A DNA stretch of 58,675 nucleotides from Macrostomum lignano (lineage: Eukaryota). Positions within the stretch are counted from its first letter, which is position 1. The number at the start of each line of letters is the position of its first letter. Of this stretch, positions 5,105 through 47,400 are shown piece by piece. Where the stretch lies: positions 1 to 58,675 of the forward strand of contig NIVC01004130.1 of the NCBI GenBank assembly GCA_002269645.1, in the 5' to 3' direction. The position numbers were made by a program, and so were the translations under genes. The notes under the pieces are model-generated. The model worked only from the letters and a program-made list of their open reading frames with translations. It ran no database searches and was not told the origin of the DNA.

Positions 5105-7776
<2,672 letters not shown>

Positions 7777-20420: not shown

Positions 20421-20687
20421 TTTGTTGAAGAAAAACAATGAAAATTCCAAATAGGACTCAAATAGCTACAATATTGACTGTCACGAGTTAAAAGTTAAAT
20501 AAGTGCTCAGTCACTGCTGTACTCCGGTCACTATTGGCTGTGAAATTTTAGCGGACCAAAATTTTAACCAACTATAGATAGCGATATGTGGCTAGTGCTA
20601 TGCTATCTAGGTAATGCTTGTAAAAATAGACTTTGCACTCATAATCTGCTTGAGTTTTCTAAGGCTCTCCGTCACCCTGTTCTCTTT

Positions 20688-22353: not shown

Positions 22354-25300
22354 ATGGCTCGCTCATCGAGAGTGGACCTGAACTGGGCGTTTTGCTGTCT
22401 CTGCAGCTCCTTTCTGGCTGTGGCCAACTGCCTCTTTCTGGTAAACAATATTTTTGTTGATTGCTGATTTACACGTGTCAACTCCACCACTTAGCAAACC
22501 TATCAAGTGGTATGCACCAGTAAACAGACAAGATTCCAGCTATAAACTGCATCAATAAACACACAAGATTCCAGCCATAAACTGCATCAATAAAAACGCA
22601 AGATTCCAGCTATAAACTGCATCAATAAACACACAGGATCCCAGCTATAAACTGCATCAATAAACACACAAGATTCCAGCTACAGTATAAACTGCATCAA
22701 TAAACACACAGGATCCCAGCTATAAACTGCATCAATAAACACACAGGATCCCAGCTATAAACTGCATCAATAAACACACAAGATCCCAGCTATAAACTGC
22801 ATCAATAAACACACAAGATCCCAGCCATAAACTGCATCAATAAACACACAAGATTCCAGCTATAAACTGCATCAATAAACACACAAGATCCCAGCCATAA
22901 ACTGCATCAATAAACACACAAGATTCCAGCTACAGTATAAACTGCATCAATAAACACACAAGATTCCAGCTACAGTATAAACTGCATCAATAAACACACA
23001 GGATCCCAGCTATAAACTGCATCAATAAACACACAGGATCCCAGCTATAAACTGCATCAATAAACACACAAGATTCCAGCTACAGTATAAACTGCATCAA
23101 TAAACACACAAGATCCCAGCCATAAACTGCATCAATAAACACACAAGATTCCAGCTATAAACTGCATCAATAAACACACAAGATCCCAGCCATAAACTGC
23201 ATCAATAAACACACAAGATCCCAGCTATAAACTGCATCAATAAACACACAAGATCCCAGCCATAAACTGCATCAATAAACACACAAGATCCCAGCTATAA
23301 ACTGCATCAATAAACACACAAGATTCCAGCTATAAACTGCATCAATAAACACACAAGATTCCAGCTATAAACTGCATCAATAAACACACAAGATCCCAGC
23401 TATAAACTGCATCAATAAAAACACAAGATCCCAGCCATAAACTGCATCAATAAACACACAAGATTCCAGCTATAAACTGCATCAATAAAAACACAAGATC
23501 CCAGCTATAAACTGCGATAATAAACACACAAGATCCCAGCCATACACTGCATCAATAAACACCAAGATTCCAGCTATAAACTGCCTCAATAAACACACAA
23601 GATTCCAGCTATAAACTGCCTCAATAAACACACAAGATTCCAGCTATAAACTGCATCAATAAAAACACAAGATCCCAGCCATAAACTGCATCAATAAACA
23701 CACAAGATTCCAGCTATAAACTGCATCAATAAAAACACAAGATCCCAGCTATAAACTGCGATAATAAACACACAAGATCCCAGCCATACACTGCATCAAT
23801 AAACACACAAGATTCCAGCTATAAACTGCATCAATAAACACACAAGATCCCAGCCATAAACTGCATCAATAAACACACAAGATCCCAGCTATAAGCTGCA
23901 TCAATAAACACACAAGATTCCAGCTATAAACTGCAATAATAAACACACAAGATCCCAGCGATAAACTGCATCAATAAACATATAAACTGCCTTAATAAAC
24001 AAAGCACAAGGGACCCCAACCGAAAGCTGCATTCCCCACAAACCGCGCCGCTCCCAGATCTTCGGCACCGCTTGCATCGTGCTGAGTGCGGTCTGGCAGC
24101 AGTTGCTGCAATCGTCCAACAACAATTCGTCATTATCACCATCCGCTGAACGTCGACAGCTTGTTGATTGCCTTCAAGCCGTGGCAACCGCAGCCGGCAT
24201 CAAGGATGTGTCGCTGGCAGCTCAGAATGCCCTGAGCTCCATTGGACCAATCGATACCGCTCTGCTGATCCTTGGCGTCAGTTTCACTTTGCTGGCTATC
24301 TTGGGCAGCTGCAGTTTGTGCTGCAGATCGAGAGGCGGCCTGGCTGCTGTAAGGCTGTTTAATTGACTTTTTATTGTGTGCTGATTTCTCTTTAAATATA
24401 ATTGAGTAGTACCCAGGGACATATAAATGGTATAGACTCTAATGGTTTCTGAGTACATTGGTTAGAGTTAGAGTACACCTGAGCTATGACTCATATTAGC
24501 GTCGATCTATACTTTACTGAATGATTAGGCCTGGATTGAAGTCATTGGAAGGAAGACATTCAAGTCCATAATATTTTTACCATTTTTAATCAAATTTAAA
24601 AAACAAAACTCACTAATTATAATTACAGTAAACAAAAAATATTTTCAAATTCACGACATCTATTTTCAGTACCTGGTCATCCTGTCAATGATATTCTTTG
24701 CTCAGCTGCTCATCCTAATTCTGCTCTATGGCAGTCCGGAGACTGTAAGTTGAGTTGTTTGTTTAAAAATCCGACTCAGTTTGATGGTTGCAACTGGTTG
24801 CTGTGAAAGATTCAATTTAGACTACTGAGAAAAGTAGGCTCATAAAGATTTGAATCGTAAAATCTCTCAAAGGTCCGAAAAATTCGCTATAAAAGAAACG
24901 GCAGCGTAAAAACACGCACTGAGAGTGCGCACAACAGTCCCCCGTGACTCGCTTAATCCTGTTAAACTATGCCCACAGTTCGACTCGCTAGTGAGGCAGC
25001 TGATGCAGCGCTGCGTTAGGCGTTACAGCGGCATCAGCTCAGCCAACGGTGCCAGCCTCCTGTTAAACGCTATGCAGATCTACGCCGGCTGTTGCGGCAC
25101 TGACAATGGGACCGATTTTCAAAACGCGAACTGGAATCGGAGCTACTCGATGACCCTGTTTAGACAGACGTTTACGCACAGTAAGTGCTTGCAGAAAATG
25201 CGTACAGAGACCGCACATTATAGCACTTTGGTTGCAATTGCATGCTTCATCCTTTTCTTGTTCAATAATTAAGACAATAACGTATATTTACCATTCCATC

Positions 25301-27078: not shown

Positions 27079-27459
27079 TTAAATCGCCGTTGTTGATAGT
27101 TTTATCTCTGAAATTGCACCCTTTGATTTTATTCCGTAAAATAATAATGAACTTTTAAGTAAAGTATAAAAAAGCAACTAAATGTAGCTAACATCCTGGA
27201 TTTATCAGTTTTTATTTTGTGTTTTACGTACTTTTTTACATATAAAAAATAATCATTTTATCAGATAAATTCTGCAGTTTTACTTAATTTTGGTTGTGTA
27301 AATATAAATTCTTTAAAACCGACAACTTTGGGTCGATTTCAGAACGACGACGACGATCTATAATTAGTTAAGCCCACTTGCTTTCTTTCTTTTTCAGCCT
27401 TTAGATTTTTGCAGTAGAAAAACCAATGTTTAAAACCGTTTCTATCAACAAGCAAGAAA

Positions 27460-30400
27460 ATTACGCGTAAAAGGAGAAAGCGTGTAAATTTAAGGGTGAT
27501 ACTTTGCCCTTCTGTAAGTAGTTTTATGCCTGGACATGCACATTTCATTTTTTAAATTGGCATCATTCGATTGCCTGTCTGGAGTATAAATTATACATTA
27601 TCTTTTTTAGCTAGAGAATTCGTCTTATAAATTCATAATTGCCTTTTAATTTTACTCTTAAGCTGAGGCAGGCTGCTAGTGCTAGGCCTATTACTAATAT
27701 TAGTAAAGTATTAAAGTTGCCTATTAGTATTATTATTAGACATGAAGGTCTAAGATTTACTTTATTATGGCATTAGGCTTTAAAGTTTAAATTATGGTAT
27801 CAAGCCTAAGGCTCATTCTATATAAGATGGACATTTTTGGAAAATAGAAAAAAGTCAATATTTTTGCTTGCCATTGCCTTATCAGCCAATTTTTTTACCA
27901 AATGTTTTTTATGTATAATAGGCCTATCTACAATCTAAGAATAAATGAATGATAAAATGTTAGATTAGTATGCTATCAAGTGGCAGAAAGTCATTTTTGT
28001 AAAAATTTAGACATTTTTCTAAGCAAAAGACATCATTAAGTTTGTGTACCTTTTAAAAACAAATAGAAAGCTTTGGAAGGTTGAAACAAACTATAGATAA
28101 AAGTATAGTACTTGCATTATCAGATAAAAGTATTGGTGACCAAATAATCTATTATATTTTTAATATATTGGTACCTCAAAGTTACTGAATTGACAGAAAA
28201 AAATATGTTACGACCATAATGTTACGACCATAAGGCTGCCTTTTCTTTTGTATCTTTGTTGCCTTTTTGAGTTTATATATTCTACAAAAAGAGTATGATT
28301 ACTAAAGATGTTCTTAGTCAACTTTTTAAAAATGTATTGCAAAATATCAAAAATAAAAATGTTATAAGACTTTTACCTTTTAGTTTCTATATGTCAAAAA
28401 TCCTGTTGTTACGACCATAAGTGCCATTCAAGGTTTAATAGCATCTATACTAATGATGATATCTACATGAAACTCTATAAAAATATTTTTGACAAAATTA
28501 TCTTTCATTTAAAATATTGGTTTAGTATATTCTATTATTATATTTCATTTTATAAGTAAAAATAGCCTGTCATGTTACGACCATGCTTATATGGAATGAG
28601 CCCTAAGTATTTTAGATATATCCATCAAGTGCTTTGTAAAGGCTTTAGTCTTTAGAATTTAGAAATTTTCTAACAATACAATAGTATACAGCATTCTATT
28701 GTATCCCTACATTTAATTATTTTCTTTGAAAATTTTAGTTTCTATTTAGTTTATTGATAAATACTATAATGGATTAAATAGAAAGATTTATGAAGTTCAA
28801 CAGATAAATTGATAATTAGGCCTATCAACTAGTAAAACTAGTGAATGGGAAATCCTAGGCCTATAAATAAACAGTTGTACAATAAAACAGCAATAAAAAT
28901 GGTTGTAGATATAGGTAAATGGCCAGTCATGGTTTTAGGTATATTTATCAATATTGTGTTTGAGTTATTGAGTCTACTGCATTTGCCCTGCGTTGACTTT
29001 ATAGTCAGGAAGATAGCCTTTTCATGGAAAATTTGGGAGTAAAAAGAGGTTAAAGGTGCACTGTGCCAGCATAATATGGTGCAAGAAAAAAATTGGCACT
29101 TTTTTGTAAAAGACAAAATCTTATGACCAGACAATATTTTCTCTAATAAAAATTAGCATATAACTAGCAATCTAGTGTAGCCCCCCTTTGGGGTGCCTAC
29201 TAAGAAAAGAGCAAAAACAGTTCATGGAAAACAATAAAAAGGCACATTTTCTTAAATACCAGTTCCTTCTTCACTTTTAAAAATCACCTTATTCGTGTAA
29301 AATTGTCATAGTCAAAGATGTTTGCAAAGTAAAAGAACCATTTTTTCTTTAAAATTAACAACAGACTACAAAATATAGCTTCCCCTAAATAGAAAATATT
29401 CCCAAGACAGCAAGCACCCCCTCCAAAAGTAAACAACCCCAGATAGCAAGCATTCTGTAGATAGCAAGCATCTCCCAGATAGCAAGCATCTCCCAGATAG
29501 CAAGCATTCTGCAGATAGCAAGCATCTCCCAGATAGAAGCATCCACCCAGATAGCAAGCATCTCCCAGATAGCAAGCATTCTGTGATAGCAAGCATCTCC
29601 TAGATAGAAGCATCCACCCAGATAGCAAGCATTCTGTAGATAGCAAGCATTCTGCAGATAGCAAGCATCTCCCAGATAGAAGCATCCACCCAGATAGCAA
29701 GCATCTCCCACATAGCAAGCATTCTGCAATAGCAAGCATCTCCCAGATAGAAGCATCCACCCAGATAGCAAGCATTTTGTAGATAGCAAGCATTCTGCAG
29801 ATAGCAAGCATCTCCCAGATATTGTTGAAGCATCCACCCAGATAGCAAGCATCCTGCAGATAGCAAGCACCTCCCAGATAGTATAGAAGCATCCTGCAAA
29901 TATAATAAGCACCCCCCCCCCCAGATATTATAGAAGAATCCACCTAGATAGCAAGAATCCCTAAATAGCAAGCATCCTTAGATAGAAAGAATCCCATACA
30001 TGTAGCCAATACCCCCTCTCCCAAATAGCAAGTATCCCCCCTCGAGAGCAAGCATCCTCCAGATAGCAAGCATCCGCAAGACAGCAAGTAGCTAGTGCAA
30101 ATGTTACCTCTGCTAATGCAATAATAGCTTTCTTAGGTTGTGCAACAATCCATGTCTTAGCGAGCGCAATAATCTCTTTTAGATAGCGCAATAATTGGCT
30201 TCTCAGCTAGTGCAATAATATTTTACTCATCAAGTCCAAAAATCAATGTCTCAGCTAGTGCAATAGCCTTTTCTAATCTAGTGCAATAATCCTTGGCTTA
30301 TCAAGTGCAATAATCCTTGGTTTATCTAGTGCCATAATCCAGGTCTTTTTAATTAGTCCTTTAATAAAAGCTTTCAATGAAAAAATTTATGCTACTTTTA

Positions 30401-33400
30401 TTTTTTATTTTACACTACTAAGATTCAAACCTAGGTTGCTGCATTAGCAGTCCAATCTGTTCACCTCTATTCTAGCTCTCATTGAAATTATAAAGGAATT
30501 TGTAGCACTTATAATTCAACACTCACACCAAGTCAATTGAGTAAAAGTCACACGAAGCAGTTATGACATAATCAGTTTCTTAGGCAAGTTAGTACCAGTC
30601 TCTATTAAAGTTAGCAATGTGGTTACGCAATATAAATCAAGTATTGTACTATGCTTCCACACTGCGTTTTCAATACTGTGATGCAATTCAATTCAGTGTC
30701 AAAATTCAGCCAGTATATACAGACAATAAATAAAAAGCCTATTGTGATGCAATCTATTTCAGAATCAGAATTCAACCAGTCAGTTTTTCCCTAGCATTCC
30801 TACAATGCATTTCAAGTTGAAAGAGCTGCTTGACCTTTGCAAAAAAGCTTGTTTTTCGAATATTTAATCCCTTTAGCATCGAGCAATTTCTTAGCCACGT
30901 TGCATGTACTGTCAAGGGAAAATTTCTGATTAAACAGTGCAAGTTTGAACAAAATCGGTTGAGCCATTTTTGCTAAAATCGATCACATACCAAGATACCT
31001 AGATACTTATATTACATGCACAACCTAGGGAATCACTGGGCCATTTCTATTGGCGACGCACACATGTAAGTTGCTATTGGCTGAGAGCAGTCACGTGACT
31101 ACTATTCTGTCCAATAGCAACTTACATGTGTGTGTTGCCAATAGAAATGGCCAGGTGAATCCATAGGTTGCACCCAAGCATGCCTAGATACCTAGATACT
31201 GACATACCATTTTTAGTATATGGATTTCTTTTTATTAGCAGTTTTTTATTTGCCAATGTATTGAAAGCTTTTTAATTAATTTATGTAAACAAAGCATTTT
31301 CTATGAAAGAGATTCAAATACAAGTTTTACTGGTATTTTTAAAATGGCAGATTATTGATTTTTGCATTTTTTCAAAAAGTTATAGTACATGTGACACAGG
31401 CAAACTTTTTGACATGAATAGTTCTGGCACACAACATAATCAAACTTTTTTTATAGGATTTGTCCTGGCACAGGCATGCTATGATCTTGATGGGGGGAAT
31501 CACAAACCCAAAAAATCACAACTCCAAATGCTTTCTATCATAAACCCAAAATATCATAAACCCAAAATATCATAAACCCAAAATATCACAACCCCAAAAT
31601 AACATAACTCCAAAATTGCTAGCAGCAAACATTATAAACCCGAAAAATCACAAACCCAAAATATCGTAATTCTGAAAGTTCTAGCAATGTCCAACACTAG
31701 TTTGGTTTTTGGAGTTATGATATTTTGGGTTTATGATGGGAAGTGCTTTGAGAGTTGTGATTTTTCAGGTTTATGATGGCAACCCATCTTGACTATGACA
31801 CTAACTGGCCATTGACTAAGTCTACCTATCTAGTAGGCAGTCACAAGCATTTTGTCCATTGCTTTTTCATTTCTTGATAGAAAAATATTTATAACAAAAG
31901 AAATTAAATTTAGTTTCATTCATATACTAAAAATAGTCATTTGGTATCAATTATTGCACTTAATAAGACAATGATTATTGCACTAGATAGAAAAAATTTT
32001 CCACTGAATCCACAGACTGAATCCACAGACAAAAATTATTCCACAGACTAAAAAAAACTATTGCATTAGCTAAGACATAGATTATTGAATTACCTGAGAA
32101 AGTAATTATTGCATTAGCCAAGGAAATAGTTGCACTAGCTTCTAGCTATCTGGTAGATGCTTGCTATCTAGTAGATACTTGCTATCTGGTAGATACTTGC
32201 TATCTAGAGGATGCTTATTATTTGTGGGTTGCTTGCTATTTTATTTAGGGAGAGGGCGCTTCTTATTGTATTTAGATGGGAGGATGCTTGCTATCAAGAT
32301 ATGCTTGCTGTCTATGTCTAGGGATACTTGCTGTTTGGGGATGCTTGCTATTTGGGGATGCTTGATATTGGGGAGACATGAGGCTTGCTCTTGGGGATGG
32401 GGGATACTTGCTACCTGGGGGCTGTTTGCTATCTGGGTTAATTTCTATCTGGCGGATGCTTGCTGTCTTGGGGATGTTTTCTATTTAAGGGAAGGCTTGC
32501 TATCTTTGTGAAGAAAGAACTTTAGTTGTTCTTTAAAATGTTCTTTTAAATAAAGGGGGCACTAGATTGCTATTAATTCTATAGCTTACTTTTCATAATA
32601 CAATTTGTGAGTTGTGTAAAAATTTATAGTTATATGTTGTTTAATATGTAGTTTTATTTGTCATAATATTTTAGAGAAATGGGATAACCCATTGTATAAT
32701 ATTTAAATATTAGGACAAGCGGGTGTTGCATTTTAGGCTACTGGTTTATTATTGCTATGCTTAGTGGATTTACTGGGTTGAGTTTGTAGGTCACTGCTAC
32801 TAGGCTCCTGATATTCTCTAATCCTAGTATGTTAGTGAGTAAAAAACTGTAAGGACACCAATATAGTATTTTTAATTCAACACAAACTTTTAAAAGAAAG
32901 AAAAGATTTTTTATTATACAAAAGAGTGGCTTGTTACATTATCTAAGTGCTTGGGCAAGACTCCCAGTTAGAGGCAAGATTCCTCTTTGTGCATTCTAAC
33001 TCTATTCCCCTATCCCTTTTACCTTTAACTTCCTTAAATTCTAAGTTGAGCTGCGGAATGCAGCATGGGTGTTCAGACAGGCTTTCTTTTCCTAGGAGCC
33101 CAACTGTTCTATATTAGTAGAGAGCCCAAAAATTCGCGGTTTACCCCCATCATAATTACCTTCGCTGGCCAAAACTACTGACAGTAGTATAAAAGCATAT
33201 TTGTCCTGTCTAAATTCTGCCCCTAAACTATGCCCTACTACATATCCAATAGGAAGACAATTTTAATTTTAACCAATCTTCTAGTCCATAAAACTCAATG
33301 TCTTTAATTAGATGATTTATTGATTATAATTTATCTGTTAGGCTTATATTTGATAGATGATTGACAGATAGCCAGGTTAATAAAAATATAAACAAAAAAT

Positions 33401-34145
33401 TATGGTAAATATTGTTTTTAGATATGCTTATACTTCTAATAAAATTAGTTGCTTGTTATCACTAATATTAAAAAAGAGTTTATCTATTGCTATCTCATTC
33501 TAATATCATAATGCTAATGTTGTAATAAATATTTTGTGGCAGACAAAAAGAGTAACAGATGAACTGACAGACATCAACCATAAGTCTTATATATACCCCA
33601 TATTGACTAACCACTGACTAATTCGACCCATCTTCACCCAACTGTCAGACTTGGTGCCATAGAAATTTTATAGCTTTAAAGCTTTTTTAGGAGGAACTCG
33701 AGTCTTCTATTGGGTTATAGACTTAACCAATAGACATGTTTGCTACCATATGTATATTGTGTAGTTCCATATTGGAATAAGTTTGAAAAATCTATAGACA
33801 ATCTATAGACATGCAACATAGACCACAAAAATAGCCCAAAAGTGCAACAAATTACATAGAAGCATTAAAATACACTGCATAAAAGCATAACACAAACACT
33901 GAAGATGAAATGAAAAATGTTTCGATGAGGGCCTATGTTATTTTAATTCTTAAATTATTTTATAATAACTCATTTGCTGAAAAAGCCATAATGTGGCACA
34001 GCCCACACGCATGAATCACTCCCCATCATCTGCCCGCTGCCCGCAGGTGGACGCATCGGCAGAGCCGCCTGAGTGCCTGCCGGCGCTAGTGCTAGCTGAT
34101 CACAATCGAGTCCCACCTTGGGACCCTGATCCGTTTGGCACTTGA
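27460..34145 (+). CDS. AUU-initiated regulatory uORF (uCC-like) of the ODC-like gene; exons 27460-27513 and 34047-34145, 50 codons
   Basis: AAAATT start, then ITRKRRKRVNLRVILCPS, GTAAGT donor (phase 0), ccgctgcccgcag acceptor (phase 0), VDASAEPPECLPALVLADHNRVPPWDPDPFGT*. Matches the known AZIN1/ODC uCC pattern. Confidence 0.75.
27810..28603. mobile_element. Decayed PIF/Harbinger-type MITE
   Basis: TIR (G)GGCTCATTC(T/C)ATATAAG flanked by TAA on both sides. Confidence 0.7.
31021..31170. mobile_element. 150-bp palindromic MITE nested in the foldback-like element
   Basis: ~60-bp TIRs CAACCTA(G/T)GGA(A/T)TCAC...CATGTAAGTTGCTATTGG. Confidence 0.8.
31491..31788. mobile_element. MITE with subterminal atcataaacccaaaat repeats
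   Basis: GATGGG...CCCATC ends and inverted ~70-bp arms. TSD unclear. Confidence 0.65.
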
Positions 34146-34334
34146 ACTCTGGATTGTTGACTTTTTTCTGTTTTTTTGAGTGTTTCCTCTTAAATATTTT
34201 ATCGCCTCCATTGTCTGTTGCAATCAATCAGATTTAATTTTTTATACTTGCGCATCATATACATGTCATACTACTAACAAAGACTTAATTTAGATCAGTA
34301 GCAAGTTTAGCGTTGTTTTTGTGTTATTTACCTG

Positions 34335-37300
34335 ATGAGAGAATCGCAACTGGAGCATCAGCAGCCTCAGCAGCAGCACCTGCTCTCAGCCCCAACACCG
34401 GCAGTTTGCCCACCAATTGGATGTGCTCTGGCGCCTCACCTGCCCAATCTTGAGCAATGCGATCAGCCGGTTGTGGCCTGCGACTTGGCCAGCGCCCAGC
34501 GCTGTCTGGCCGACTGGTGCAGCCGGTTTCCTGGCGTGCACGCGTCAACCAGCGCCCAGACTCTGGGCAGCTGGCCACTGACCCACGTGTTGGCTCTCAG
34601 CGGCCGCGTGTCCTTTCGGGCCTACTCTAAGGTGAGGCTGACGGTTAAAATAACCTGTCTTTGACCTTATTTGCTATAATAATAATAGTAGTAATTGAAG
34701 CAATTCAGAGTTAAGTGTCTTGCTCAGGGGCACACAAATATTATTCCGAGTTGACCTGACGTGTACTTCGCCCACGTTACTTGACCTTAATTGATCAAAT
34801 TGACCTTTATTGTCCCAATTGACCATAATTGTCCCAATTGACCTTCAATTGTCCTAATTGACCTTCAATTGTCCTAATTGACCTTCAATTGTCCCAATTG
34901 ACCTTCAATTGTCCCAATTGACCTTCAATTGTCCCAATTGACCTTCAATTGTCCCAATTGACCTTCAATTGTCCCAATTGACCTTCAATTGTCCCAATTG
35001 ACCTTCAATTGTCCCAATTGACCTTCAATTGTCCCAATTGACCTTCAATTGTCCCAATTGACATTCAATTGTCCCAATTGACATTCAATTGTCCCAATTG
35101 ACCTTCAATTGCCCCAATTAACCTTCAATTGTCCCAATTGACCTTCAATTGTCCCAATTGACCTTGATTGAGCAGTCCGACCTAAACGCTGCCGTGTCCG
35201 CCGGAGTCCCGGGCCACGCCATCCTGCTGGCCAACCCGTGCAAAACTCGCGGCCTGGCCAGGCACGCTCGTCGCCTTGGCGTCGGCGTCACCGTATTCGA
35301 CTCGGAGCCGGAGCTGGCCCGCCTAGCCGCGGCTTGGCCGGACGTCGAGCTGCTGCTTCTGCTGGCCGCATCGCCCCGCTGCCACCGGCTGGGCGCCCGG
35401 CCCGAAGAGGCGCCCCGCCTGCTGGCCGCCGCCAGACGCCACGGACTGCGAGTTGCCGGCGTAGCCGTCTGGTTCGGCGACGACAACGAATGCGAGGGCG
35501 ACGACGGCGGCGAGGTCAACTCCGACGTCGACGCCGAGTGGGCTGCTGCCGCGTCGACCGCCTGCGGTACTCTGGCCTTGGCCAGGCGTCTCGGCCATGC
35601 CAATGCCGATGTTGTCGACCTCGGATGTCTGTCCACCGGCGCCTTGGCCGGGCGGGCCCTGCCGGCCTTTGCGAACGCTGTCGGTGAGACTTTTTATATT
35701 TTCCATTATAGTAAGAGAGTTATTTTTATACGTCAAAATTAGAATTCTTATATTATGCTACTGTAGATTTTTTGTAACTACTCGTATTTTGCCTAACTTT
35801 ATTAAAACAAATGTTGTTTTGCGGCATAATTTTTTGAGAGTAAAATGAGTGTGATGCTGAATAATGCGATTTTTATGAAATTACCAATTAAAATTAACAG
35901 GCTATTAATACAAAAAAAGCTGTAAATACTTCGCTTGCTACAGCGTCACAACAATAATACAGGGTATTTCTTTGCAAACATTTAAGCCTTTAAAACCATT
36001 CTTAGAAACGGAGTAATTTTTATAACGTATTTCGAGCGGTTTCTCTCAAAATGCCTGCCTTAAATAGGTATTGGAAACGGTGACTGTCAGCCTCGTCTAC
36101 TCTGCGACCTGACTCCGGCGTTGCTAGCCGAATCCGTTGTCATGGCAACCAGGGTGTTGGCTAAAGCGGCGGCCGAGCAGCCAGGCTGTGGCGGCTACAG
36201 CTACCGGCTCAGCGGCCCGGGCCTCGGCGGCCAACTTTGCGGCCTCTTCAGCCGTGAGTGCGAGGGCGGCGGCTGCAGCGGCAGCAGAGACGGCGTGCCA
36301 AGCCGACTGGCCGACTGCGGCGGCGACCCGTTGAACCTCGTGCTGCCAGAGCTCAGCGTCGGTGACTGGTTGCTATGGCGCGGCCTGAGGGCCTGTCCGA
36401 CCGCTGCCAGGCTGATGCACTGGTGAGCCGTGGCTGTTTTTTTAATTCTAAGAGTGGCTTCGAATTCGGCTTTTCTTCCTGGAAATTTACATGTGCTGTC
36501 TTGAACTTTGCTGGAACATTTTTTACTTGGAACTTTAGAATTTCCCTTCGAACTTTGGGAGTTCATTCTTGGGATTTCCCCTTGAACTTTACAGTTGGCT
36601 ATTGGGATTTCCCTTCCAACTTTGAAGTTAATTCTTGGGATTTCACTTCCAACTTTAAAGTTCATTCTTGGGATTTCCCTTCCAACTTTTAAGTTCATTC
36701 TTGGGATTTCCCTTCCAACTTTAAAGTTCATTCTTGGGATTTCCCTTCCAACTTTTAAGTTCATTCTTGGGATTTCCCTTCCAACTTTAAAGTTCATTCT
36801 TGGGATTTCCCTTCCAACTTTAAAGTTCGCTCTTGGGATTTCCCTTCCAACTTGAACGTTCATTATTGGGATTTCCCTTCTAACTTTAAAGTTCATTCTT
36901 GGGATTTCCCTTCCAACTTTAAAGTTCGCTCTTGGGATTTCCCTTCCAACTTGAACGTTCATTATTGGGATTTCCCTTCTAACTTTAAAGTTCATTCTTG
37001 GGATTTCCCTTGAACTTTAAAGTTCGCTCTTGGGATTTCCCTTCCAACTTGAACGTTCATTCTTGGGATTTCCCTTGAACTTTAAAGTTCGCTCTTGGGA
37101 TTTCCCTTCCAACTTGAAAGTTCATTATTGGGATATCCCTTCTAACTTTAAAGTTTATTATTTAAATTTAAAATTTCTATATTGGATTTTTTGGTATTCC
37201 CCTATCGATACTGTTAACCTCGCGATGTTCAAATTTATTTTCAATTTCCTTAATCGTTTGCAGCCTCTTCACCGGCGAGCTGATGGAGACAAAGCCCGCA

Positions 37301-37336
37301 GCCTGTCTGGAAGAGGAGCCGCTGCCGACCGCTTAA
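34335..37336 (+). CDS. Ornithine decarboxylase-like pseudoenzyme / antizyme-inhibitor-like, 410 aa; exons 34335-34631, 35176-35683, 36068-36422, 37264-37336
   Basis: ODC-fold landmarks present (GVP..ANPCK, VFDSEPEL, LPELSVGDWLLW) and all junctions in frame. PLP lysine (YAVK->TSAQ), HVGS (->WFGD), GGGF (->GCLS) and EPGR (->DLTP) are lost. Confidence 0.85.
34790..35168. repeat. 20-bp minisatellite in ODC-like intron 1
   Basis: (aattgaccttcaattgtccc)n running up to the acceptor. Confidence 0.95.
36510..37150. repeat. 33-bp minisatellite in ODC-like intron 3
   Basis: Unit cttgggatttcccttccaactttaaagttcatt. Confidence 0.95.
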
Positions 37337-41215: not shown

Positions 41216-41401
41216 GCAAAGCTATGCTTTCTAAATATGACTATTATTTTAAAATATAATGCCTGTTTGTATTTTATTAATAACTCAATCAATCCACTTC
41301 AGTGTCTTTGCCCTGCTGAAGTTGAATCTCAAATTCAGTCTGCTAGATTTGACCAGCAGAACAGGGGCTGCGAAACAAATCTTTTTATTTTTAAGACACT
41401 C

Positions 41402-44400
41402 ATGTCTGCTCAAAGTACTCAGCAGCATCAGCATCAGCTAGAGAGGCAGGACTCCAATCCGGTGTGGGCCGAGTACCTCGATCCTCCGCTGCAGTACACC
41501 GCCATTGCCTCCTATACTGGCGCCGATGATGACGAACTCAGCTTCACGGCTGGCGCTAGGATTCTTGTTGTATCTCGCGATCCTCGAGACAGTCGGGACG
41601 AGGGCTGGTTTGTAGCCATTGCGCCGGCTTCTCCTAGCCAGGGAGGTGCAAGCGCTGGAGAATATTCCAGGCCAGAATCTCAGCGTACCGTGCTCAAATT
41701 GTTGCCAGGAAATTTTGTTCGACCGTCTGCTGAGATTGCCAGCGCCTGTCAGCAGGAGGTGCAGGCAGTTGGAAGGTGAATATTGCTTCTGGGTTATTCT
41801 GTATCCAGCATTGATGATATATTGAGATTGTGTTTGATCTGTGCCGTTCTATGATAAATCTATTTGATGTGTGCCGCTGTGTAATATAATCTGTTTGATC
41901 TGTGCCGCTGTGTAATATAATCTGTTTGATCTGTGCCGCTGTGTAATTAAATCTGTTTGATCTGTGCCGCTGTGTAATATAATCTGTTTGATCTGTTCCG
42001 CTGTGTAATTAAATCTGTTTGATCTGCGCCGCTGTGTAATATAATCTGTTTGATCTGTGCCGCTGTGTAATAAAATCTGTTTGATCTGTGCCGCTGTGTA
42101 ATTAAATCTGTTTGATCTGCGCCGCTGTGTAATATAATCTGTTTGATCTGTGCCGCTGTGTAATATAATCTGTTTGAACTGTGCCGCTGTGTAATATAAT
42201 CTGTTTGATCTGCGCCGCTGTGTAATTAAATCTGTTTGATCTGTGCCGCTGTGTAGTTAAATCTGTTTGATCTGTGCTGCTGTGTAATTAAATCTGTTTG
42301 ATCTGTGCCGCTGTGTAATATAATCTGTTTGATCTGTGCCGCTGTGTAATATAATCTGTTTGATCTGTGCCGCTGTGTAATATAATCTGTTTGAACTGTG
42401 CCGCTGTGTAATATAATCTGTTTGATCTGCGCCGCTGTGTAATATAATCTGTTTGATGTGCCGCTGTGTAATATAATCTGTTTGATCTGTGCCGCTGTGT
42501 AATATAATCTGTTTGATCTGTGCCGCTGTGTAATATACTCTGTTTGATCTGTGCCACTGTAATATAATCTGTTTGATCTGTGCCGCTGTGTAAAATAATC
42601 TGTTTGATCTGATTTTCCCAGTTTAAAAAAAAAACAAAGCACTTCAATAGACACCTGCATCTTTCATCCACCCCACAGCGTTCCCCAGCATCAGCAAGAT
42701 CCTCATGGGCATCATCAGCATGAGCATGAGCAGCAGCAGTCGCCACCCACGGTCTCATCCGATGAGATCGCATACGACTGTCTCCTCGGATCTGGTGGCT
42801 TCGCCGAAGTCCACCGAGCCACCTGGCGCGGCCAGCCAGTCGCAGTGAAACTGTTCGGCAGCGGCTTCTGCCCCGACCAGGTGCGCCGGGAGGCCGAGCT
42901 TATCTGGCTGTGCCGCCACCCGAACATTGTCCGAGTTCTGGCCATTGTGGCCGAGCCGCCACCCGCTCTGCTGTTGCAATTTGCCGCTGGCGGAGCTCTT
43001 AATAATTTTTTACGCGGCCGGCGACTTCCACCGGACGTGATTGTGAACTGGGCCGGACAGGTGGCCGAGGCCATGCGATTCCTGCACGAGGGCGCACCTG
43101 TGACCGTCTTCCACCGGGACCTGAAGTCTAGCAACAGTGAGTGGCTCTGCGTACCTGGGTAGGAGATTGGGCTTGGATACGTAAATTGGTAGACATTACA
43201 GGTAGATAGGTAGACACTACAGGTAGATAGACACTACAGGTAGATAGACACTACAGGTAGATAGACACTACAGGTAGATAGGTAGACACTACAGGTAGAT
43301 AGGTAGACACTGCAGGTAGATAGGTAGACACTACAGGTAGATAGACACTACAGGTAGATAGGTAGACACTACAGGTAGATAGGTAGACACTACAGGTAGA
43401 TAGGTAGACACTACAGGTAGATGGACACTACAGGTAGATAGGTAGACACTGCAGGTCGATAGGTAGACACTATAGTTGGATGGGTAGACACTACAGGTAG
43501 ATAGACACTACAGGTAGGTAGGTAGACACTGCGGGTAGAAAGGTAGACACTATAGTTAGATAGGTAGACACTATAGTAGATAGGTAGAAGACACTATCTG
43601 CAGATAGGTAGACACTATAGTTAGATAGGTAGACACTATAGTTAGATAGGTAGACACTATGCAGATAGGTAGACACTATAGTTAGATAGGTAGACACTAT
43701 AGTTAGATAGGTAGACACTATAGTTAGATAGGTAGACACTAAAGTTAGATAGGTAGACACTATGCAGATAGGTAGACACTATAGTTAGATAGGTAGACAC
43801 TATAGTTAGATAGGTAGACACTATAGTTAGATAGGTAGACACTATAGTTAGATAGGTAGACACTATAGTTAGATAGGTAGACACTATAGTTAGATAGGTA
43901 GACACTAAAGTTAGATAGGTAGACACTATAGTTAGATAGGTAGACACTAAAGTTAGATAGGTAGACACTATGCAGATAGGTAGACACTATAGTTAGATAG
44001 GTAGACACTATAGTTAGATAGGTAGACACTATAGTTAGATAGGTAGACACTATAGTTAGATAGGTAGACACTATAGTTAGATAGGTAGACACTATAGTTA
44101 GATAGGTAGACACTATAGTTAGATAGGTAGACACTATAGTTAGATAGGTAGACACTATAGTTAGATAGGTAGACACTATAGTTAGATAGTTAGACACTAT
44201 AGTTGGATGGGTAGACACTATGCAGATAGGTAGACACTATGCAGATAGGTAGACACTAAAGTTAGATAGGTAGACACTATGCAGATAGGTAGACACTATG
44301 CAGATAGGTAGACACTATAGTTAGATAGGTAGACACTATGCAGATAGGTAGACACTATAGTTAGATAGGTAGACACTATAGTTAGATAGGTAGACACTAT

Positions 44401-47400
44401 AGTTAGATAGGTAGACACTATAGTTAGATAGGTAGACACTATAGTTAGATAGGTAGACACTAAAGTTAGATAGGTAGACACTAAAGTTAGATAGGTAGAC
44501 ACTAAAGTTAGATAGGTAGACACTATGCAGATAGGTAGACACTATAGTTAGATAGGTAGACACTATAGTTAGATAGGTAGACACTATAGTTAGATAGGTA
44601 GACACTATAGTTAGATAGGTAGACACTATAGTTAGATAGGTAGACACTATAGTTAGATAGGTAGACACTATAGTTAGATAGGTAGACACTATAGTTAGAT
44701 AGGTAGACACTATAGTTAGATAGGTAGACACTAAAGTTAGATAGGTAGACACTATAGTTAGATAGGTAGACACTAAAGTTAGATAGGTAGACACTATGCA
44801 GATAGGTAGACACTATAGTTAGATAGGTAGACACTATGCAGATAGGTAGACACTATAGTTAGATAGGTAGACACTATGCAGATAGGTAGACACTATAGTT
44901 AGATAGGTAGACACTATAGTTAGATAGGTAGACACTAAAGTTAGATAGGTAGACACTATGCAGATAGGTAGACACTATAGTTTGATAGGTAGACACTATA
45001 GTTAGATAGGTAGACACTATAGTTAGATAGGTAGACACTATAGTTAGATAGGTAGACACTATAGTTAGATAGGTAGACACTATGGTTAGATAGGTAGACA
45101 CTAAAGTTAGATAGGTAGACACTATAGTTAGATAGGTAGACACTAAAGTTAGATAGGTAGACACTATGCAGATAGGTAGACACTATAGTTAGATAGGTAG
45201 ACACTATAGTTAGATAGGTAGACACTATAGTTAGATAGGTAGACACTATAGTTAGATAGGTAGACACTATAGTTAGATAGGTAGACACTATAGTTAGATA
45301 GTTAGACACTATAGTTGGATGGGTAGACACTATGCAGATAGGTAGACACTATGCAGATAGGTAGACACTATGCAGATAGGTAGACACTATAGTTAGATAG
45401 GTAGACACTATAGTTGGATGGGTAGACACTATGCAGATAGGTAGACACTATGCAGATAGGTAGACACTAAAGTTAGATAGGTAGACACTATGCAGATAGG
45501 TAGACACTATGCAGATAGGTAGACACTATAGTTAGATAGGTAGACACTATGCAGATAGGTAGACACTATAGTTAGATAGGTAGACACTATGCAGATAGGT
45601 AGACACTATAGTTAGATAGGTAGACACTATAGTTAGATAGGTAGACACTATAGTTGGATAGGTAGACACTATAGTTAGATAGGTAGACACTATAGTTAGA
45701 TAGGTAGACACTATAGTTAGATAGGTAGACACTATGCAGATAGGTAGACACTATAGTTAGATAGGTAGACACTAAAGTTAGATAGGTAGACACTATGCAG
45801 ATAGGTAGACACTATGCAGATAGGTAGACACTATAGTTAGATAGGTAGACACTATGCAGATAGGTAGACACTATAGTTAGATAGGTAGACACTATGCAGA
45901 TAGGTAGACACTATAGTTAGATAGGTAGACACTATAGTTAGATAGGTAGACACTATAGTTAGATAGGTAGACACTATAGTTAGATAGGTAGACACTATAG
46001 TTAGATAGGTAGACACTATGCAGATAGGTAGACACTATAGTTAGATAGGTAGACACTAAAGTTAGATAGGTAGACACTAAAGTTAGATAGGTAGACACTA
46101 TGCAGATAGGTAGACACTATAGTTAGATAGGTAGACACTATAGTTAGATAGGTAGACACTATAGTTAGATAGGTAGACACTATAGTTGGATGGGTAGACA
46201 CTATGCAGATAGGTAGACACTATGCAGATAGGTAGACACTATAGTTAGATAGGTAGACACTATAGTTAGATAGGTAGACACTATAGTTAGATAGTTAGAC
46301 ACTATAGTTGGATGGGTAGACACTATGCAGATAGGTAGACACTATGCAGATAGGTAGACACTATGCAGATGGGTAGACACTATAGTTAGATAGGTAGACA
46401 CTATAGTTGGATGGGTAGACACTATGCAGATAGGTAGACACTATGCAGATAGGTAGACACTAAAGTTAGATAGGTAGACACTATGCAGATAGGTAGACAC
46501 TATGCAGATAGGTAGACACTATAGTTAGATAGGTAGACACTATGCAGATAGGTAGACACTATAGTTAGATAGGTAGACACTATGCAGATAGGTAGACACT
46601 ATAGTTAGATAGGTAGACACTATGCAGATAGGTAGACACTATAGTTAGATAGGTAGACACTATAGTTAGATAGGTAGACACTATAGTTTGATAGGTAGAC
46701 ACTATAGTTAGATAGGTAGACACTATAGTTAGATAGGTAGACACTATGCAGATAGGTAGACACTATAGTTAGATAGGTAGACACTATAGTTAGATAGGTA
46801 GACACTATAGTTAGATAGGTAGACACTATAGTTAGATAGGTAGACACTATAGTTAGATAGGTAGACACTATAGTTAGATAGGTAGACACTATGCAGATAG
46901 GTAGACACTATAGTTAGATAGGTAGACACTAAAGTTAGATAGGTAGACACTATAGTTAGATAGGTAGACACTATGCAGATAGGTAGACACTATAGTTAGA
47001 TAGGTAGACACTATAGTTAGATAGGTAGACACTATAGTTAGATAGGTAGACACTATGCAGATAGGTAGACACTATAGTTAGATAGGTAGACACTATAGTT
47101 AGATAGGTAGACACTATAGTTAGATAGGTAGACACTATAGTTAGATAGGTAGACACTATAGTTAGATAGGTAGACACTATAGTTAGATAGGTAGACACTA
47201 TAGTTAGATAGGTAGACACTATAGTTAGATAGGTAGACACTATAGTTAGATAGGTAGACACTATGCAGATAGGTAGACACTATAGTTAGATAGGTAGACA
47301 CTAAAGTTAGATAGGTAGACACTATAGTTAGATAGGTAGACACTATGCAGATAGGTAGACACTATAGTTAGATAGGTAGACCCTATAGTTAGATAGGTAG

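What the first reader, a model, noticed from the sequence alone, without database searches (positions are those of the whole stretch)
34335..37336. Catalytically dead ODC homologue with intact frame: candidate independently evolved antizyme inhibitor
Seen: an uninterrupted 410-aa, 4-exon ORF that has lost the PLP Schiff-base Lys (K69 equivalent is Q), the H197 motif, the GGG phosphate loop, EPGR and the Y389 equivalent. It keeps the segment matching the antizyme-binding element (NPCKTRGLARHARRLGVGVTVFDSEPELAR). Known: AZINs are inactive ODC paralogues that sequester antizyme. Inference: this is more degenerate than vertebrate AZINs as I recall them, and together with the uCC suggests a pseudoenzyme antizyme sponge in an invertebrate.
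Basis: partly seen in the sequence, partly recalled or inferred. Interest (0 to 1): 0.72.

Follow-up and report, generated by a model that had tools for sequence, protein, structure and literature searches.

The report
Dead ODC paralogue in a flatworm
This flatworm (Macrostomum lignano) gene encodes a conserved, catalytically dead copy of the polyamine enzyme ornithine decarboxylase, preceded by a polyamine-sensing upstream reading frame, and it most likely acts as a decoy for the regulator antizyme; such decoys are already known to have arisen many times.

Summary
Window 34335-37336 (+) carries a four-exon, 410-aa ORF, 100% identical to M. lignano BOX15_Mlig015075g3. It is an ODC homologue (Pfam E=7e-10; predicted fold matches ODC structures, E~1e-24). 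It keeps only 3 of the 18 residues needed for ODC catalysis; human AZIN1 keeps 14.

It is not a decaying pseudogene. Spliced transcripts of orthologues exist in two other species, and dN/dS is 0.16-0.27.

A second dead paralogue lineage ("B", Mlig005245) coexists with it in all three species. All genes and transcripts with enough 5' sequence carry the same upstream conserved coding region (uCC): a conserved AUU start, about 50 codons, ending in DHNxxPPWDPDP.

The antizyme-binding segment is the part best kept relative to ODC. The lineage is not related to vertebrate AZIN1.

An antizyme-inhibitor role is the best-supported reading but remains unproven. Antizyme binding was not tested, and I could not find a canonical Macrostomum ODC.

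Recurrent inactive ODC paralogues, including in flatworms, are already published (Ivanov 2010, Cassella 2017). This is a new, unusually degenerate member of a known kind.

The parts
27439..27513 (+). 5' exon holding the first part of the uCC ('..KKITRKRRKRVNLRVILCPS'). The 5' limit and transcription start are unknown. The conserved candidate AUU start is at 27460-27462 in the context gaaaAUUa. A GTAAGT donor starts at 27514.
   Evidence: blastn to the sp2 orthologue's 5' UTR: 31 nt, 96.8% identity, E=6e-10; tblastn E=1.9e-8. Sequence read. The same element lies at the same distance upstream in the second genomic copy, L005. The AUU and its context are conserved in four mRNAs of both paralogue families.
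27514..34046 (+). Intron of about 6.5 kb that splits the uCC between two codons (phase 0). It contains an 18/36-bp minisatellite at about 29.44-29.88 kb.
   Evidence: GTAAGT donor and cag|GTG acceptor. Joining 27513 to 34047 restores a continuous frame colinear with the intronless sp2 transcript. The intron sits at the same codon position in the paralogue B gene.
34047..34145 (+). Second part of the uCC: VDASAEPPECLPALVLADHNRVPPWDPDPFGT, with the stop (TGA) at 34143-34145. The PPW stalling motif is encoded here.
   Evidence: Between species, nucleotide conservation in the 5' UTR is confined to this stretch, and the differences are mostly synonymous. The DHNxxPPWDPDP motif is found in all six genes or transcripts of families A and B that have 5' sequence.
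34146..34334 (+). Non-conserved, AT-rich spacer of 189 nt between the uCC stop and the main ATG.
   Evidence: Does not align between species.
34335..34631 (+). First coding exon of the main ORF (aa 1-99). It contains 'STSAQ', where Q75 (34557-34559) replaces the PLP Schiff-base lysine K69.
34781..35165 (.). Intronic minisatellite, 20-bp unit x 19.4 copies.
35176..35683 (+). Second coding exon (an alternative in-frame acceptor lies at 35173). It holds the antizyme-binding-element equivalent at 35233-35322 (aa 119-148), 'VWFGDD' in place of 'FHVGSG', and 'DLGCLS' in place of 'DIGGGF'.
   Evidence: The annotated protein and both orthologous transcripts support the 35176 acceptor.
36068..36422 (+). 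Third coding exon. It holds 'CDLTP' in place of 'AEPGR', a degenerate beta-domain, and the conserved 'LPELSVGDWLLW'.
36540..37159 (.). Intronic minisatellite, 33-bp unit x 18.8 copies.
37264..37336 (+). Last coding exon, with the stop (TAA) at 37334-37336. There is no ODC-type C-terminal PEST tail.

Best explanation
This is a functional pseudoenzyme gene of Macrostomum lignano, BOX15_Mlig015075 ('family A').

Shown here:
- The protein keeps the two-domain ODC fold but has lost PLP binding, substrate binding and the catalytic residues.
- It has been kept by purifying selection since before three Macrostomum-type species diverged.
- An older sister lineage of equally dead paralogues ('family B', Mlig005245) coexists with it.
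- Its mRNA leader carries a two-exon uCC of about 50 codons with a conserved near-cognate AUU start and a C-terminal PPW motif.

Inferred, by analogy with vertebrate AZIN1: when polyamines are high, ribosomes stall at PPW, queue back, initiate more often at the AUU, and translation of the main ORF falls. When polyamines are low, the protein is made. It cannot make putrescine, so the only established way for such a product to raise polyamine levels is to bind antizyme through the retained antizyme-binding surface. That would free ODC and/or polyamine uptake from antizyme. This would make it an antizyme inhibitor that evolved independently of the vertebrate ones.

My confidence that it is a conserved, dead, uCC-controlled ODC paralogue is about 0.95. 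My confidence that its job is antizyme sequestration is about 0.5.
For: Dead enzyme: 15 of 18 key residues are replaced, with only minor differences among the three orthologues.

Fold retained: the AlphaFold2 model has pLDDT 78.8 and pTM 0.78. Foldseek's top hits are ODC structures at E~1e-24, TM 0.64-0.75, over 355-380 columns.

Selection: dN/dS is 0.158, 0.237 and 0.265, with bootstrap upper bounds of 0.35 or less and dS of 0.77-1.16. Family B gives 0.33.

Expression: the orthologues are intronless contigs in RNA assemblies.

uCC: it is conserved at the codon level while the rest of the leader is unalignable. The AUU in the gaaaAUU context, the 48-55 codon length and DHNxxPPWDPDP are shared by A and B. 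The exon structure is also shared by A and B.

Literature:
- uCCs with AUU starts and adjacent prolines repress AZIN1 in response to spermidine (PMC2811004).
- The PPW motif is the polyamine/eIF5A-sensitive pause site (PMC8705083, citing Ivanov 2018).
- M. lignano has an antizyme gene with a UUU-UGA frameshift site (PMC1874602).

Antizyme surface:
- Relative to the ODC consensus, the dead proteins are best preserved at positions 101-140 (identity 0.45-0.55, against canonical self-conservation of 0.54-0.63). They are worst preserved at the catalytic motifs, for example 0.08 against 0.59 at 261-280.
- P113, K115, A123, D134, E138 and L139 are kept, and K141 is R.
- Position 125 is basic, as in AZIN1 (K125), and there are no trypanosome-type acidic residues at 119, 125, 129, 137 or 140 (PMC3207831).

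Dimer-interface residues are largely replaced (R277P, K294A, V322G, Y331F, D332S, Y389C). This recalls AZIN1, which is largely monomeric in solution (PMC4139326).

The sign of uCC control (less product when polyamines are high) fits a factor that raises polyamines.
Against: - No binding test of any kind was possible.
- Only 7 of 20 human ODC-antizyme contact or AZBE positions are identical. Q116, Q119, V137 and R144, and all of interface II (Y331, D361, N398), differ (PMC4595762).
- The retained residues are 86-100% conserved in all ODCs, so they may reflect folding rather than antizyme binding.
- I did not find a canonical ODC in Macrostomum.
- In planarians, RNAi of two ODC-like paralogues gave a putrescine-independent phenotype. 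The authors took this as excluding an antizyme-inhibitor role for those paralogues (PMC5574924).
- The uCC is ancestral to animal ODC homologues in general (PMC2811004), so its presence is not specific to antizyme inhibitors.
- The structure model leans on an alignment dominated by canonical ODCs.
Confidence: 0.5

Rival explanations
1. It is a pseudoenzyme with a job outside the antizyme circuit, such as a scaffold or small-molecule binder, as proposed for planarian ODC5/6. On this view the uCC is an inherited regulatory element.
For: The active site and the C-terminal antizyme interface are remodelled far beyond what is seen in AZIN1. Two anciently diverged dead lineages are both retained, which suggests sub- or neo-functionalisation. 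Planarian ODC5/6 RNAi phenotypes were not rescued by putrescine, not mimicked by DFMO and not modified by antizyme co-silencing (PMC5574924).
Against: The uCC is conserved at codon level in both lineages over dS greater than 1. This is hard to explain unless output must still track polyamine levels. The antizyme-binding segment is the best-preserved ODC-like part.
Confidence: 0.25
2. It regulates an active ODC by heterodimerising with it. It would act either as a dominant-negative inhibitor (the alternative raised by Ivanov et al. 2010) or as a prozyme-like activator, as with the dead paralogues of trypanosomatid AdoMetDC and DHS.
For: ODC is an obligate dimer with shared active sites. This alternative is raised explicitly in the literature (PMC5574924, summarising Ivanov 2010; PMC3663545 for dead-paralogue activation). 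D134 and D364 are retained and K169 is R.
Against: Most residues that hold the ODC dimer together are replaced (PMC4139326). An inhibitor that is switched off by high polyamines would give positive feedback, the wrong sign for homeostasis. An A-B heterodimer cannot rebuild an active site, because both have lost K69 and C360. No active partner was found.
Confidence: 0.15
3. It is a decaying pseudogene or an annotation artefact whose open frame is an accident of GC-rich sequence.
For: GC-rich exons give long ORFs in other frames and on the other strand, for example 35145-35636 on the minus strand. The protein is Ala/Arg/Gly/Leu-rich.
Against: dN/dS is 0.16-0.27 in this frame. The frame is intact in three species. 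Orthologous transcripts are spliced. The uCC is conserved. A confident ODC-like fold is predicted.
Confidence: 0.02
4. It is still an enzyme, using different chemistry or a different substrate.
For: Some AZIN2/ODC-like proteins proved to be active decarboxylases, for example Xenopus xlAZIN2 (PMC6738921, title and abstract).
Against: The Schiff-base lysine, the PLP-phosphate glycine loop, H197, E274, R277, D88, C360 and D361 are all gone. No alternative lysine is conserved in the pocket motifs.
Confidence: 0.03

Closest known systems
Vertebrate antizyme inhibitor 1 (AZIN1)
   Same: It is an ODC paralogue without decarboxylase activity. Its mRNA leader carries a uCC of about 50 codons with an AUU start and a PPW motif that represses the main ORF when polyamines are high. 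It has a basic residue at position 125 of the antizyme-binding element, its ODC dimer-interface residues are replaced, and it lacks an ODC-type C-terminal degron.
   Different: It is not orthologous: the Macrostomum clade never groups with AZIN1 (0/100 bootstraps), and AZIN1 arose in early vertebrates (PMC2811004). AZIN1 keeps 14 of 18 catalytic residues, including K69, H197, GGG and C360; this protein keeps 3. AZIN1 matches human ODC at 15 of 20 antizyme-contact or AZBE positions; this protein matches at 7. Antizyme binding is demonstrated for AZIN1 and untested here.
Catalytically inactive ODC homologues of invertebrates and fungi (Ivanov, Firth & Atkins 2010), including planarian ODC2-6 (Cassella et al. 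2017, PMC5574924)
   Same: They are lineage-specific ODC duplicates with substitutions in the same 18-residue set. They have been proposed as independently evolved antizyme inhibitors or ODC inhibitors. Examples are known from another flatworm order.
   Different: Planarian paralogues mostly carry one to a few substitutions (for example K69S in ODC6, C360V in ODC5). Here 15 of 18 are changed and the C-terminal domain is barely recognisable by sequence. I found no paper in the library that deals with a Macrostomum ODC homologue. I could not test orthology with the planarian genes.
Upstream conserved coding region (uCC) of animal ODC homologues (Ivanov, Loughran & Atkins 2008; review PMC2811004)
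   Same: It is a conserved peptide-coding region in the leader, with a non-AUG (AUU) start in a favourable context and adjacent prolines near the C-terminus. Conservation is concentrated at the C-terminal end.
   Different: The review says that in six animal phyla the uCC ends in Pro-Ser. Here the end is PPWDPDP followed by 0-6 variable residues. In M. lignano the uCC is split by a 3-6.5 kb intron. In some paralogue-B protein models it is spliced in frame to the main ORF.
Macrostomum lignano paralogue B (BOX15_Mlig005245g1-3; UniProt A0A1I8GZH3 and others)
   Same: It is a sister lineage (100/100). It is also dead (4 of 18 residues kept). It has the same uCC and the same uCC intron position, and it shares the derived changes D88R, R154L and E274D and the 'D.T.ALL' replacement of EPGR.
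   Different: It is only about 30% identical to this protein. It is longer (472 aa), with a Ser-rich tail that ends in a conserved 'REIC(C)SV(M/L)LS'. Its residues at K69 (D), H197 and Y389 differ from those of family A.

Membership tests
Eukaryotic ODC / group IV (fold-type III) PLP-dependent decarboxylases | Sequence match to the N-terminal PLP-binding barrel domain (Pfam PF02784) above the curated cut-off | tested here: met
   39.1 bits against a cut-off of 23.4, E=7e-10, residues 79-199 only. PDB ODC hits at E~2e-11.
Eukaryotic ODC / group IV (fold-type III) PLP-dependent decarboxylases | C-terminal beta-domain (Pfam PF00278) | tested here: inconclusive
   Pfam reports no PF00278 hit. Only the 'LPELSVGDWLL' motif aligns by sequence. 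The AF2 model does build a beta-domain that superposes on ODC over 355-380 columns, but its pLDDT there is lower and the alignment behind it is dominated by real ODCs.
Eukaryotic ODC / group IV (fold-type III) PLP-dependent decarboxylases | The 18 residues required for decarboxylation (K69, D88, R154, K169, G171, H197, S200, G235-237, E274, R277, C360, D361, D364, G387, Y389, F397) | tested here: not met
   3 of 18 are kept (G171, G235, D364), and 3-4 of 18 in the orthologues. The protein is an ODC-family member by descent but not an ODC enzyme.
Antizyme inhibitor (functional class) | ODC homologue lacking decarboxylase activity | tested here: met
   Met at the level of sequence inference only. 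Activity was not assayed.
Antizyme inhibitor (functional class) | Binds antizyme, more tightly than ODC does, and releases ODC and polyamine uptake from antizyme | not testable with these tools
   No complex prediction or experiment was possible. The M. lignano antizyme is known only from the literature (PMC1874602).
Antizyme inhibitor (functional class) | Intact antizyme-binding element (ODC 117-140 and its contact residues) | tested here: inconclusive
   This is the best-preserved ODC-like region. P113, K115, A123, D134, E138 and L139 are kept, K141 is R, and position 125 is basic. However, Q116T, Q119L, V137P, R144A and interface II are changed, so only 7 of 20 positions are identical.
Antizyme inhibitor (functional class) | Antizyme and an active ODC present in the same organism | tested here: inconclusive
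   Antizyme: present according to PMC1874602, not re-tested here. Active ODC: none identified among the listed hits, which were only the best 150 and best 120 of 1,200 and 7,693 matches, most of them unnamed. This is a limit of the search, not evidence of absence.
Vertebrate AZIN1/AZIN2 clade (orthology) | Groups with AZIN1 rather than with ODCs | tested here: not met
   NJ bootstrap 0/100 for a grouping with AZIN1. The distance to AZIN1 (2.65) is larger than to ODC (2.05). PDB E-values are 1e-6 for AZIN1 against 2e-11 for ODC.
uCC-regulated ODC-homologue mRNAs | Conserved coding region in the 5' leader, conserved at the amino-acid level between species | tested here: met
   found in six genes or transcripts from three species and two paralogue families. 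The surrounding leader is unalignable.
uCC-regulated ODC-homologue mRNAs | Non-AUG (typically AUU) start in a favourable context | tested here: met
   An ATT in the context (a/c)gaaaATT(a/c) is invariant in the four mRNAs that have this region. Actual initiation at it was not tested.
uCC-regulated ODC-homologue mRNAs | Adjacent prolines or a PPW motif near the C-terminus | tested here: met
   PPWDPDP is invariant.
uCC-regulated ODC-homologue mRNAs | Polyamine-dependent repression of the main ORF | not testable with these tools
   Needs reporter assays.

The most novel reading that the evidence does not exclude
Macrostomum may have turned its ODC family into a polyamine-sensing pseudoenzyme system. 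Two anciently split dead lineages, A and B, each keep the uCC switch. They may work without any canonical ODC partner, for example by controlling only polyamine uptake through antizyme, or they may have acquired a new polyamine-regulated function unrelated to antizyme. This would be the most degenerate ODC-derived regulator known and would show the uCC outliving the enzyme it originally controlled.
Probability: 0.15. Interest if true: 0.65.

Novelty: new member of a known kind. Interest (0 to 1): 0.42.

Why it matters
The locus adds a clean, extreme case to the known pattern in which ODC duplicates lose catalysis and become regulators. Almost every catalytic residue is gone, yet the fold, the antizyme-binding segment and the polyamine-sensing uCC have all been held by selection in two paralogue lineages. 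That combination suits it to asking what minimal part of ODC is needed for antizyme-inhibitor function. It also allows the AUU/PPW ribosome-queuing mechanism to be tested outside vertebrates.

M. lignano is a tractable regeneration and stem-cell model in which RNAi and transgenesis are available, so the hypothesis can be tested directly. For annotation, the result shows that the gene is about 10 kb long, with a far-upstream leader exon, rather than the 3 kb annotated as CDS.

Tried and rejected
1. Searching the window protein alone in the 5.8-billion-protein index returned only itself and two orthologues. Low-complexity words appear to have swamped candidate selection, and even paralogue B was missed. 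The exhaustive profile search was needed to find B.

2. The first structure prediction, with a 3-sequence alignment, was poor (pLDDT 51.7), and I did not use it for fold search.

3. Looking for a canonical Macrostomum ODC led nowhere. The best canonical hit, P0008, shares 'LARLWPDVE' with the dead families and looked like a candidate parent. It and its relatives come from an environmental sample (JGI 3300006393) and from runs (ERR1719229, SRR26351914) other than the six that yielded the Macrostomum-type transcripts. Using P0008 as the query gave 7,693 ODC hits, and none of the 120 listed was named Macrostomum. This does not show absence.

4. I first took the in-frame ATG at 34011 or the GTG at 34047 as possible uCC starts. 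I rejected both once the upstream exon and the conserved AUU were found. The GTG is simply the first codon after the acceptor.

5. I considered that a trans-spliced leader supplies an AUG to the uCC at the 34047 acceptor. The orthologous transcripts show ordinary cis-splicing to a conserved upstream exon, so I dropped the idea.

6. An A-B heterodimer with one complementary active site, as suggested for planarian ODC5/6, is ruled out because both lineages lack K69 and C360.

7. Ivanov et al. 2008 (PNAS) and 2018 (Mol Cell) are not held in the library. Ivanov et al. 2010 appeared only as a citation in other papers, and I did not try to fetch it. Their content is cited second-hand from PMC2811004, PMC8705083 and PMC5574924.

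8. The two genomic copies are 99.3% identical and encode the same protein, so they say nothing about selection.
Full report
**Where the window comes from.** The 58,675-bp window is the complete contig NIVC01004130.1 of the Macrostomum lignano assembly GCA_002269645.1. M. lignano is a free-living flatworm. GC-rich exons (63-72% GC) sit among AT-rich introns (29-38% GC) that are full of minisatellites.

**Checking the observation.** I translated the four GC-rich blocks and joined them at GT-AG sites. This gives exons 34335-34631, 35176-35683, 36068-36422 and 37264-37336 on the + strand, encoding 410 aa. An in-frame alternative acceptor 3 nt upstream, at 35173, would add one Gln.
- The product is 100% identical to the NCBI protein 'hypothetical protein BOX15_Mlig015075g3'.
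- A second genomic copy on NIVC01002144.1 is 99.3% identical over 4.5 kb and encodes the same protein.
- Pfam recognises the N-terminal ODC barrel at 39.1 bits against a cut-off of 23.4.
- The best PDB sequence matches are T. brucei and human ODC at E~2e-11. AZIN1 scores only 1e-6.

**Catalytic residues.** I used the 18 residues regarded as essential for ODC activity, the list of Ivanov et al. 2010 as reproduced in PMC5574924. I scored them on a MAFFT alignment with human ODC (recalled sequence, verified identical to PDB 2on3), human AZIN1 (verified against 4zgz) and 46 canonical ODCs.
- The window protein keeps only G171, G235 and D364.
- The changes are K69Q, D88R, R154L, K169R, H197W, S200D, G236C, G237L, E274D, R277P, C360 lost, D361C, G387R, Y389C and F397H.
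- Human AZIN1 keeps 14 of the 18.

**Not a pseudogene.** The protein index returned two relatives, 83% and 66% identical.
- Both are encoded on short intronless contigs from RNA assemblies: SRR28338166 ('sp1'), and SRR30276804 and SRR30276812 ('sp2'). They are spliced transcripts that read straight across all three exon junctions.
- Nei-Gojobori dN/dS is 0.158 (bootstrap 0.11-0.22), 0.237 (0.17-0.30) and 0.265 (0.20-0.35), with dS of 0.77-1.16. Every 60-codon block for which the ratio could be computed gave 0.41 or less.
- Strong GC3 bias (0.76) would, if anything, deflate dS, so the inference of purifying selection is conservative.
- The dead-site residues are the same in the three species at 17 of the 18 key positions (D361 is C in two species and D in sp2).

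**Fold.** With a 27-sequence alignment, AlphaFold2 gives pLDDT 78.8 and pTM 0.78. Confidence is above 90 through most of the barrel and lower in the beta-domain. Foldseek places the model on ODC structures at E~1e-24 and TM 0.64-0.75 over 355-380 columns. The alignment is dominated by true ODCs, which biases the model towards that fold.

**A second dead lineage.** An exhaustive profile search of 1.84 billion cluster representatives found only four clusters closer than ordinary ODCs. One is family A, this gene. The other three form family B:
- M. lignano BOX15_Mlig005245g1-3, 472 aa;
- its orthologue from the sp1 runs, SRR28338163-6;
- its orthologue from the sp2 runs.

Both lineages therefore coexist in all three species. 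Family B is also dead, keeping 4 of 18 residues, and has dN/dS of 0.33. It shares with A the derived changes D88R, R154L and E274D and the replacement of EPGR. In neighbour-joining trees, A+B is monophyletic in 100 of 100 bootstraps and never joins AZIN1 (0 of 100). Long-branch attraction cannot be excluded for the A+B grouping, but the shared uCC structure supports it independently.

**The uCC, and a longer gene.**
- Upstream of the main ATG, one frame reads ...VDASAEPPECLPALVLADHNRVPPWDPDPFGT and stops at 34143-34145.
- The sp2 orthologue's leader encodes ...VDASSSEPPDSPKRSVGGDHNRIPPWDPDP followed by a stop. Nucleotide similarity between the two leaders is confined to this frame, and the differences there are mostly synonymous.
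- All family B leaders carry the same element.
- The transcripts extend the conserved frame further 5', to ...KI(T/P)RKK(K/R)RR..RV.L.P. In the window this part lies in a separate exon at about 27439-27513. The match to the sp2 leader is E=6e-10 by blastn and 1.9e-8 by tblastn.
- That exon ends in a consensus GTAAGT donor and joins in phase to the cag|GTG acceptor at 34047.
- The second genomic copy has the exon at the same distance upstream. The paralogue B gene has an intron at the same codon position.
- An ATT codon in the context gaaaATT(a/c) is invariant in all four mRNAs that cover it (window 27460-27462). From it the uCC runs 48-55 codons, 50 in this gene.
- This matches published descriptions of the animal uCC: an AUU start in a good context, adjacent prolines near the end, spermidine-dependent repression of AZIN1, and PPW as the polyamine/eIF5A-sensitive pause (PMC2811004; PMC8705083).
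- The gene therefore spans at least 27.44-37.34 kb, not just 34.3-37.3 kb.

**How it most likely works.** The shown steps are that the protein is dead, folded, conserved and expressed in relatives, and that the uCC is conserved. The rest is inference.
- A uCC lowers output when polyamines are high, so the product should act to raise polyamines.
- A dead enzyme can do that, by any known mechanism, only by neutralising antizyme. M. lignano is reported to have antizyme, with a UUU-UGA frameshift site (PMC1874602).
- Relative to the ODC consensus, the dead proteins are best preserved across positions 101-140, which include the antizyme-binding element. Other islands of preservation are 181-200 and 361-380. 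The catalytic motifs are almost erased.
- P113, K115, A123, D134, E138 and L139 are kept, and K141 is R. Position 125 is basic, as in AZIN1. None of the acidic substitutions that stop T. brucei ODC from binding antizyme is present (PMC3207831, PMC4066113).
- Most residues that hold the ODC dimer together are replaced, as they are in AZIN1, which is largely monomeric in solution (PMC4139326).

**Why this falls short of proof.**
- Only 7 of 20 known contact or AZBE positions match human ODC.
- The key residues Q119 and V137 are L and P, and interface II is not conserved (PMC4595762).
- The retained residues are nearly universal in ODCs and may be structural.
- The worm's antizyme has presumably co-evolved with its partners.
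- No complex prediction was possible with these tools.

**Rival explanations.**
1. A function outside the antizyme circuit. Planarian ODC5/6 RNAi phenotypes were independent of putrescine, DFMO and antizyme (PMC5574924). Retention of two ancient dead lineages hints at specialisation. Against this stands the tenacious conservation of the polyamine-sensing uCC.
2. Heterodimerisation with an active ODC, as inhibitor or as prozyme-like activator. This is disfavoured by the eroded dimer interface. For the inhibitor version, the feedback would also have the wrong sign.
3. A decaying pseudogene. Refuted.
4. Residual enzymatic activity. Very unlikely given the loss of the PLP-binding residues.

**Comparison with what is known, and novelty.** Repeated, lineage-specific emergence of inactive ODC paralogues as putative antizyme inhibitors was described by Ivanov, Firth & Atkins (2010) and covers flatworms (three Schmidtea paralogues). 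Cassella et al. (2017) described six planarian ODCs, five of them carrying substitutions in key residues (PMC5574924). The uCC in animal ODC-homologue leaders has been known since 2008 (PMC2811004). I found no paper in the library on Macrostomum ODC homologues. The locus is therefore a new and unusually degenerate member of a known kind. Its specific points of interest are:
- the extent of decay (3 of 18 residues kept);
- two ancient dead lineages that both retain the uCC;
- a uCC split by a long intron;
- paralogue B isoform models in which the uCC is spliced in frame to the main ORF.

**Open point.** I could not establish whether Macrostomum has a catalytically competent ODC. This determines whether the circuit would rescue ODC or only modulate polyamine uptake.

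Noticed in passing
window 35170-35178: Tandem NAGNAG acceptor (gAG|CAG|TCC) at the start of the second coding exon. Use of 35173 would add one Gln (411 aa). The annotation and both orthologous transcripts use 35176.
   Followed up: partly
window 27426-27470: A short AUG uORF (MFKTVSINKQENYA, then a stop) in another frame overlaps the conserved AUU start of the uCC in the leader exon. Whether it lies inside the transcript depends on the unknown transcription start.
   Followed up: no
L015 about 6397-6460 and 9786-9870 (NIVC01001413.1); proteins P0010, P0157, P0158: In M. lignano paralogue B, some UniProt transcript-derived models read the uCC (…DHNREPPWDPDPTT) in frame into the main ORF, while the genomic frame has a stop right after PTTG. 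This suggests alternative splicing that converts the uCC into an N-terminal extension.
   Followed up: partly
proteins P0004, P0007, P0155 (paralogue B), C-termini: The family B proteins end in a conserved 'REIC(C)SV(M/L)LS' after a long Ser/Ala-rich tail. This could be a lipidation or targeting signal. Family A lacks it.
   Followed up: no
L006 1-245 (JGI 3300006393 contig encoding canonical ODC P0008): The leader of this environmental canonical ODC mRNA also has an upstream frame containing '…HDSNKKPPW…'. This is a likely uCC in front of an active ODC. The organism is unknown (an aquatic metatranscriptome lineage, also seen in run ERR1719229).
   Followed up: partly
window 43188-52523: A 9.3-kb satellite of a 21-bp unit (GGTAGACACTATAGTTAGATA, about 457 copies, 92% matches). 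It accounts for the strong positive GC and AT skew at 44-52 kb.
   Followed up: no
window 18265-19122, 19471-20303, 20675-21990, 22513-23980: A block of dense minisatellites with 14-, 24-, 14- and 35-bp units. They create long spurious ORFs in several frames and extreme strand skews at 20-24 kb.
   Followed up: no
window 5108-7150 (+): Exons of an RBBP4/CAF-1 p48-type histone-binding WD40 protein (CAF1C_H4-bd E=2e-31; WD40 repeats). Minisatellites lie in its introns at 5766-6422 and 7052-7379.
   Followed up: partly
window 9606-13235 (-): ORFs with retroviral-type integrase (rve, Integrase_H2C2) and aspartyl protease domains. This is a fragment of an LTR retrotransposon of the worm genome. I noted it only and did not assemble it.
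   Followed up: no
window 41237-41779 (+) and 53700-54329 (+): An SH3-domain exon and the C-terminal part of a protein tyrosine/Ser-Thr kinase domain (E=3e-22). They may be parts of one downstream gene interrupted by the large satellite.
   Followed up: no
L005 (NIVC01002144.1, 186394-201206): A second genomic copy of the whole locus, including the far-upstream uCC exon, is 99.3% identical. It is either a haplotype or a very recent duplicate.
   Followed up: partly
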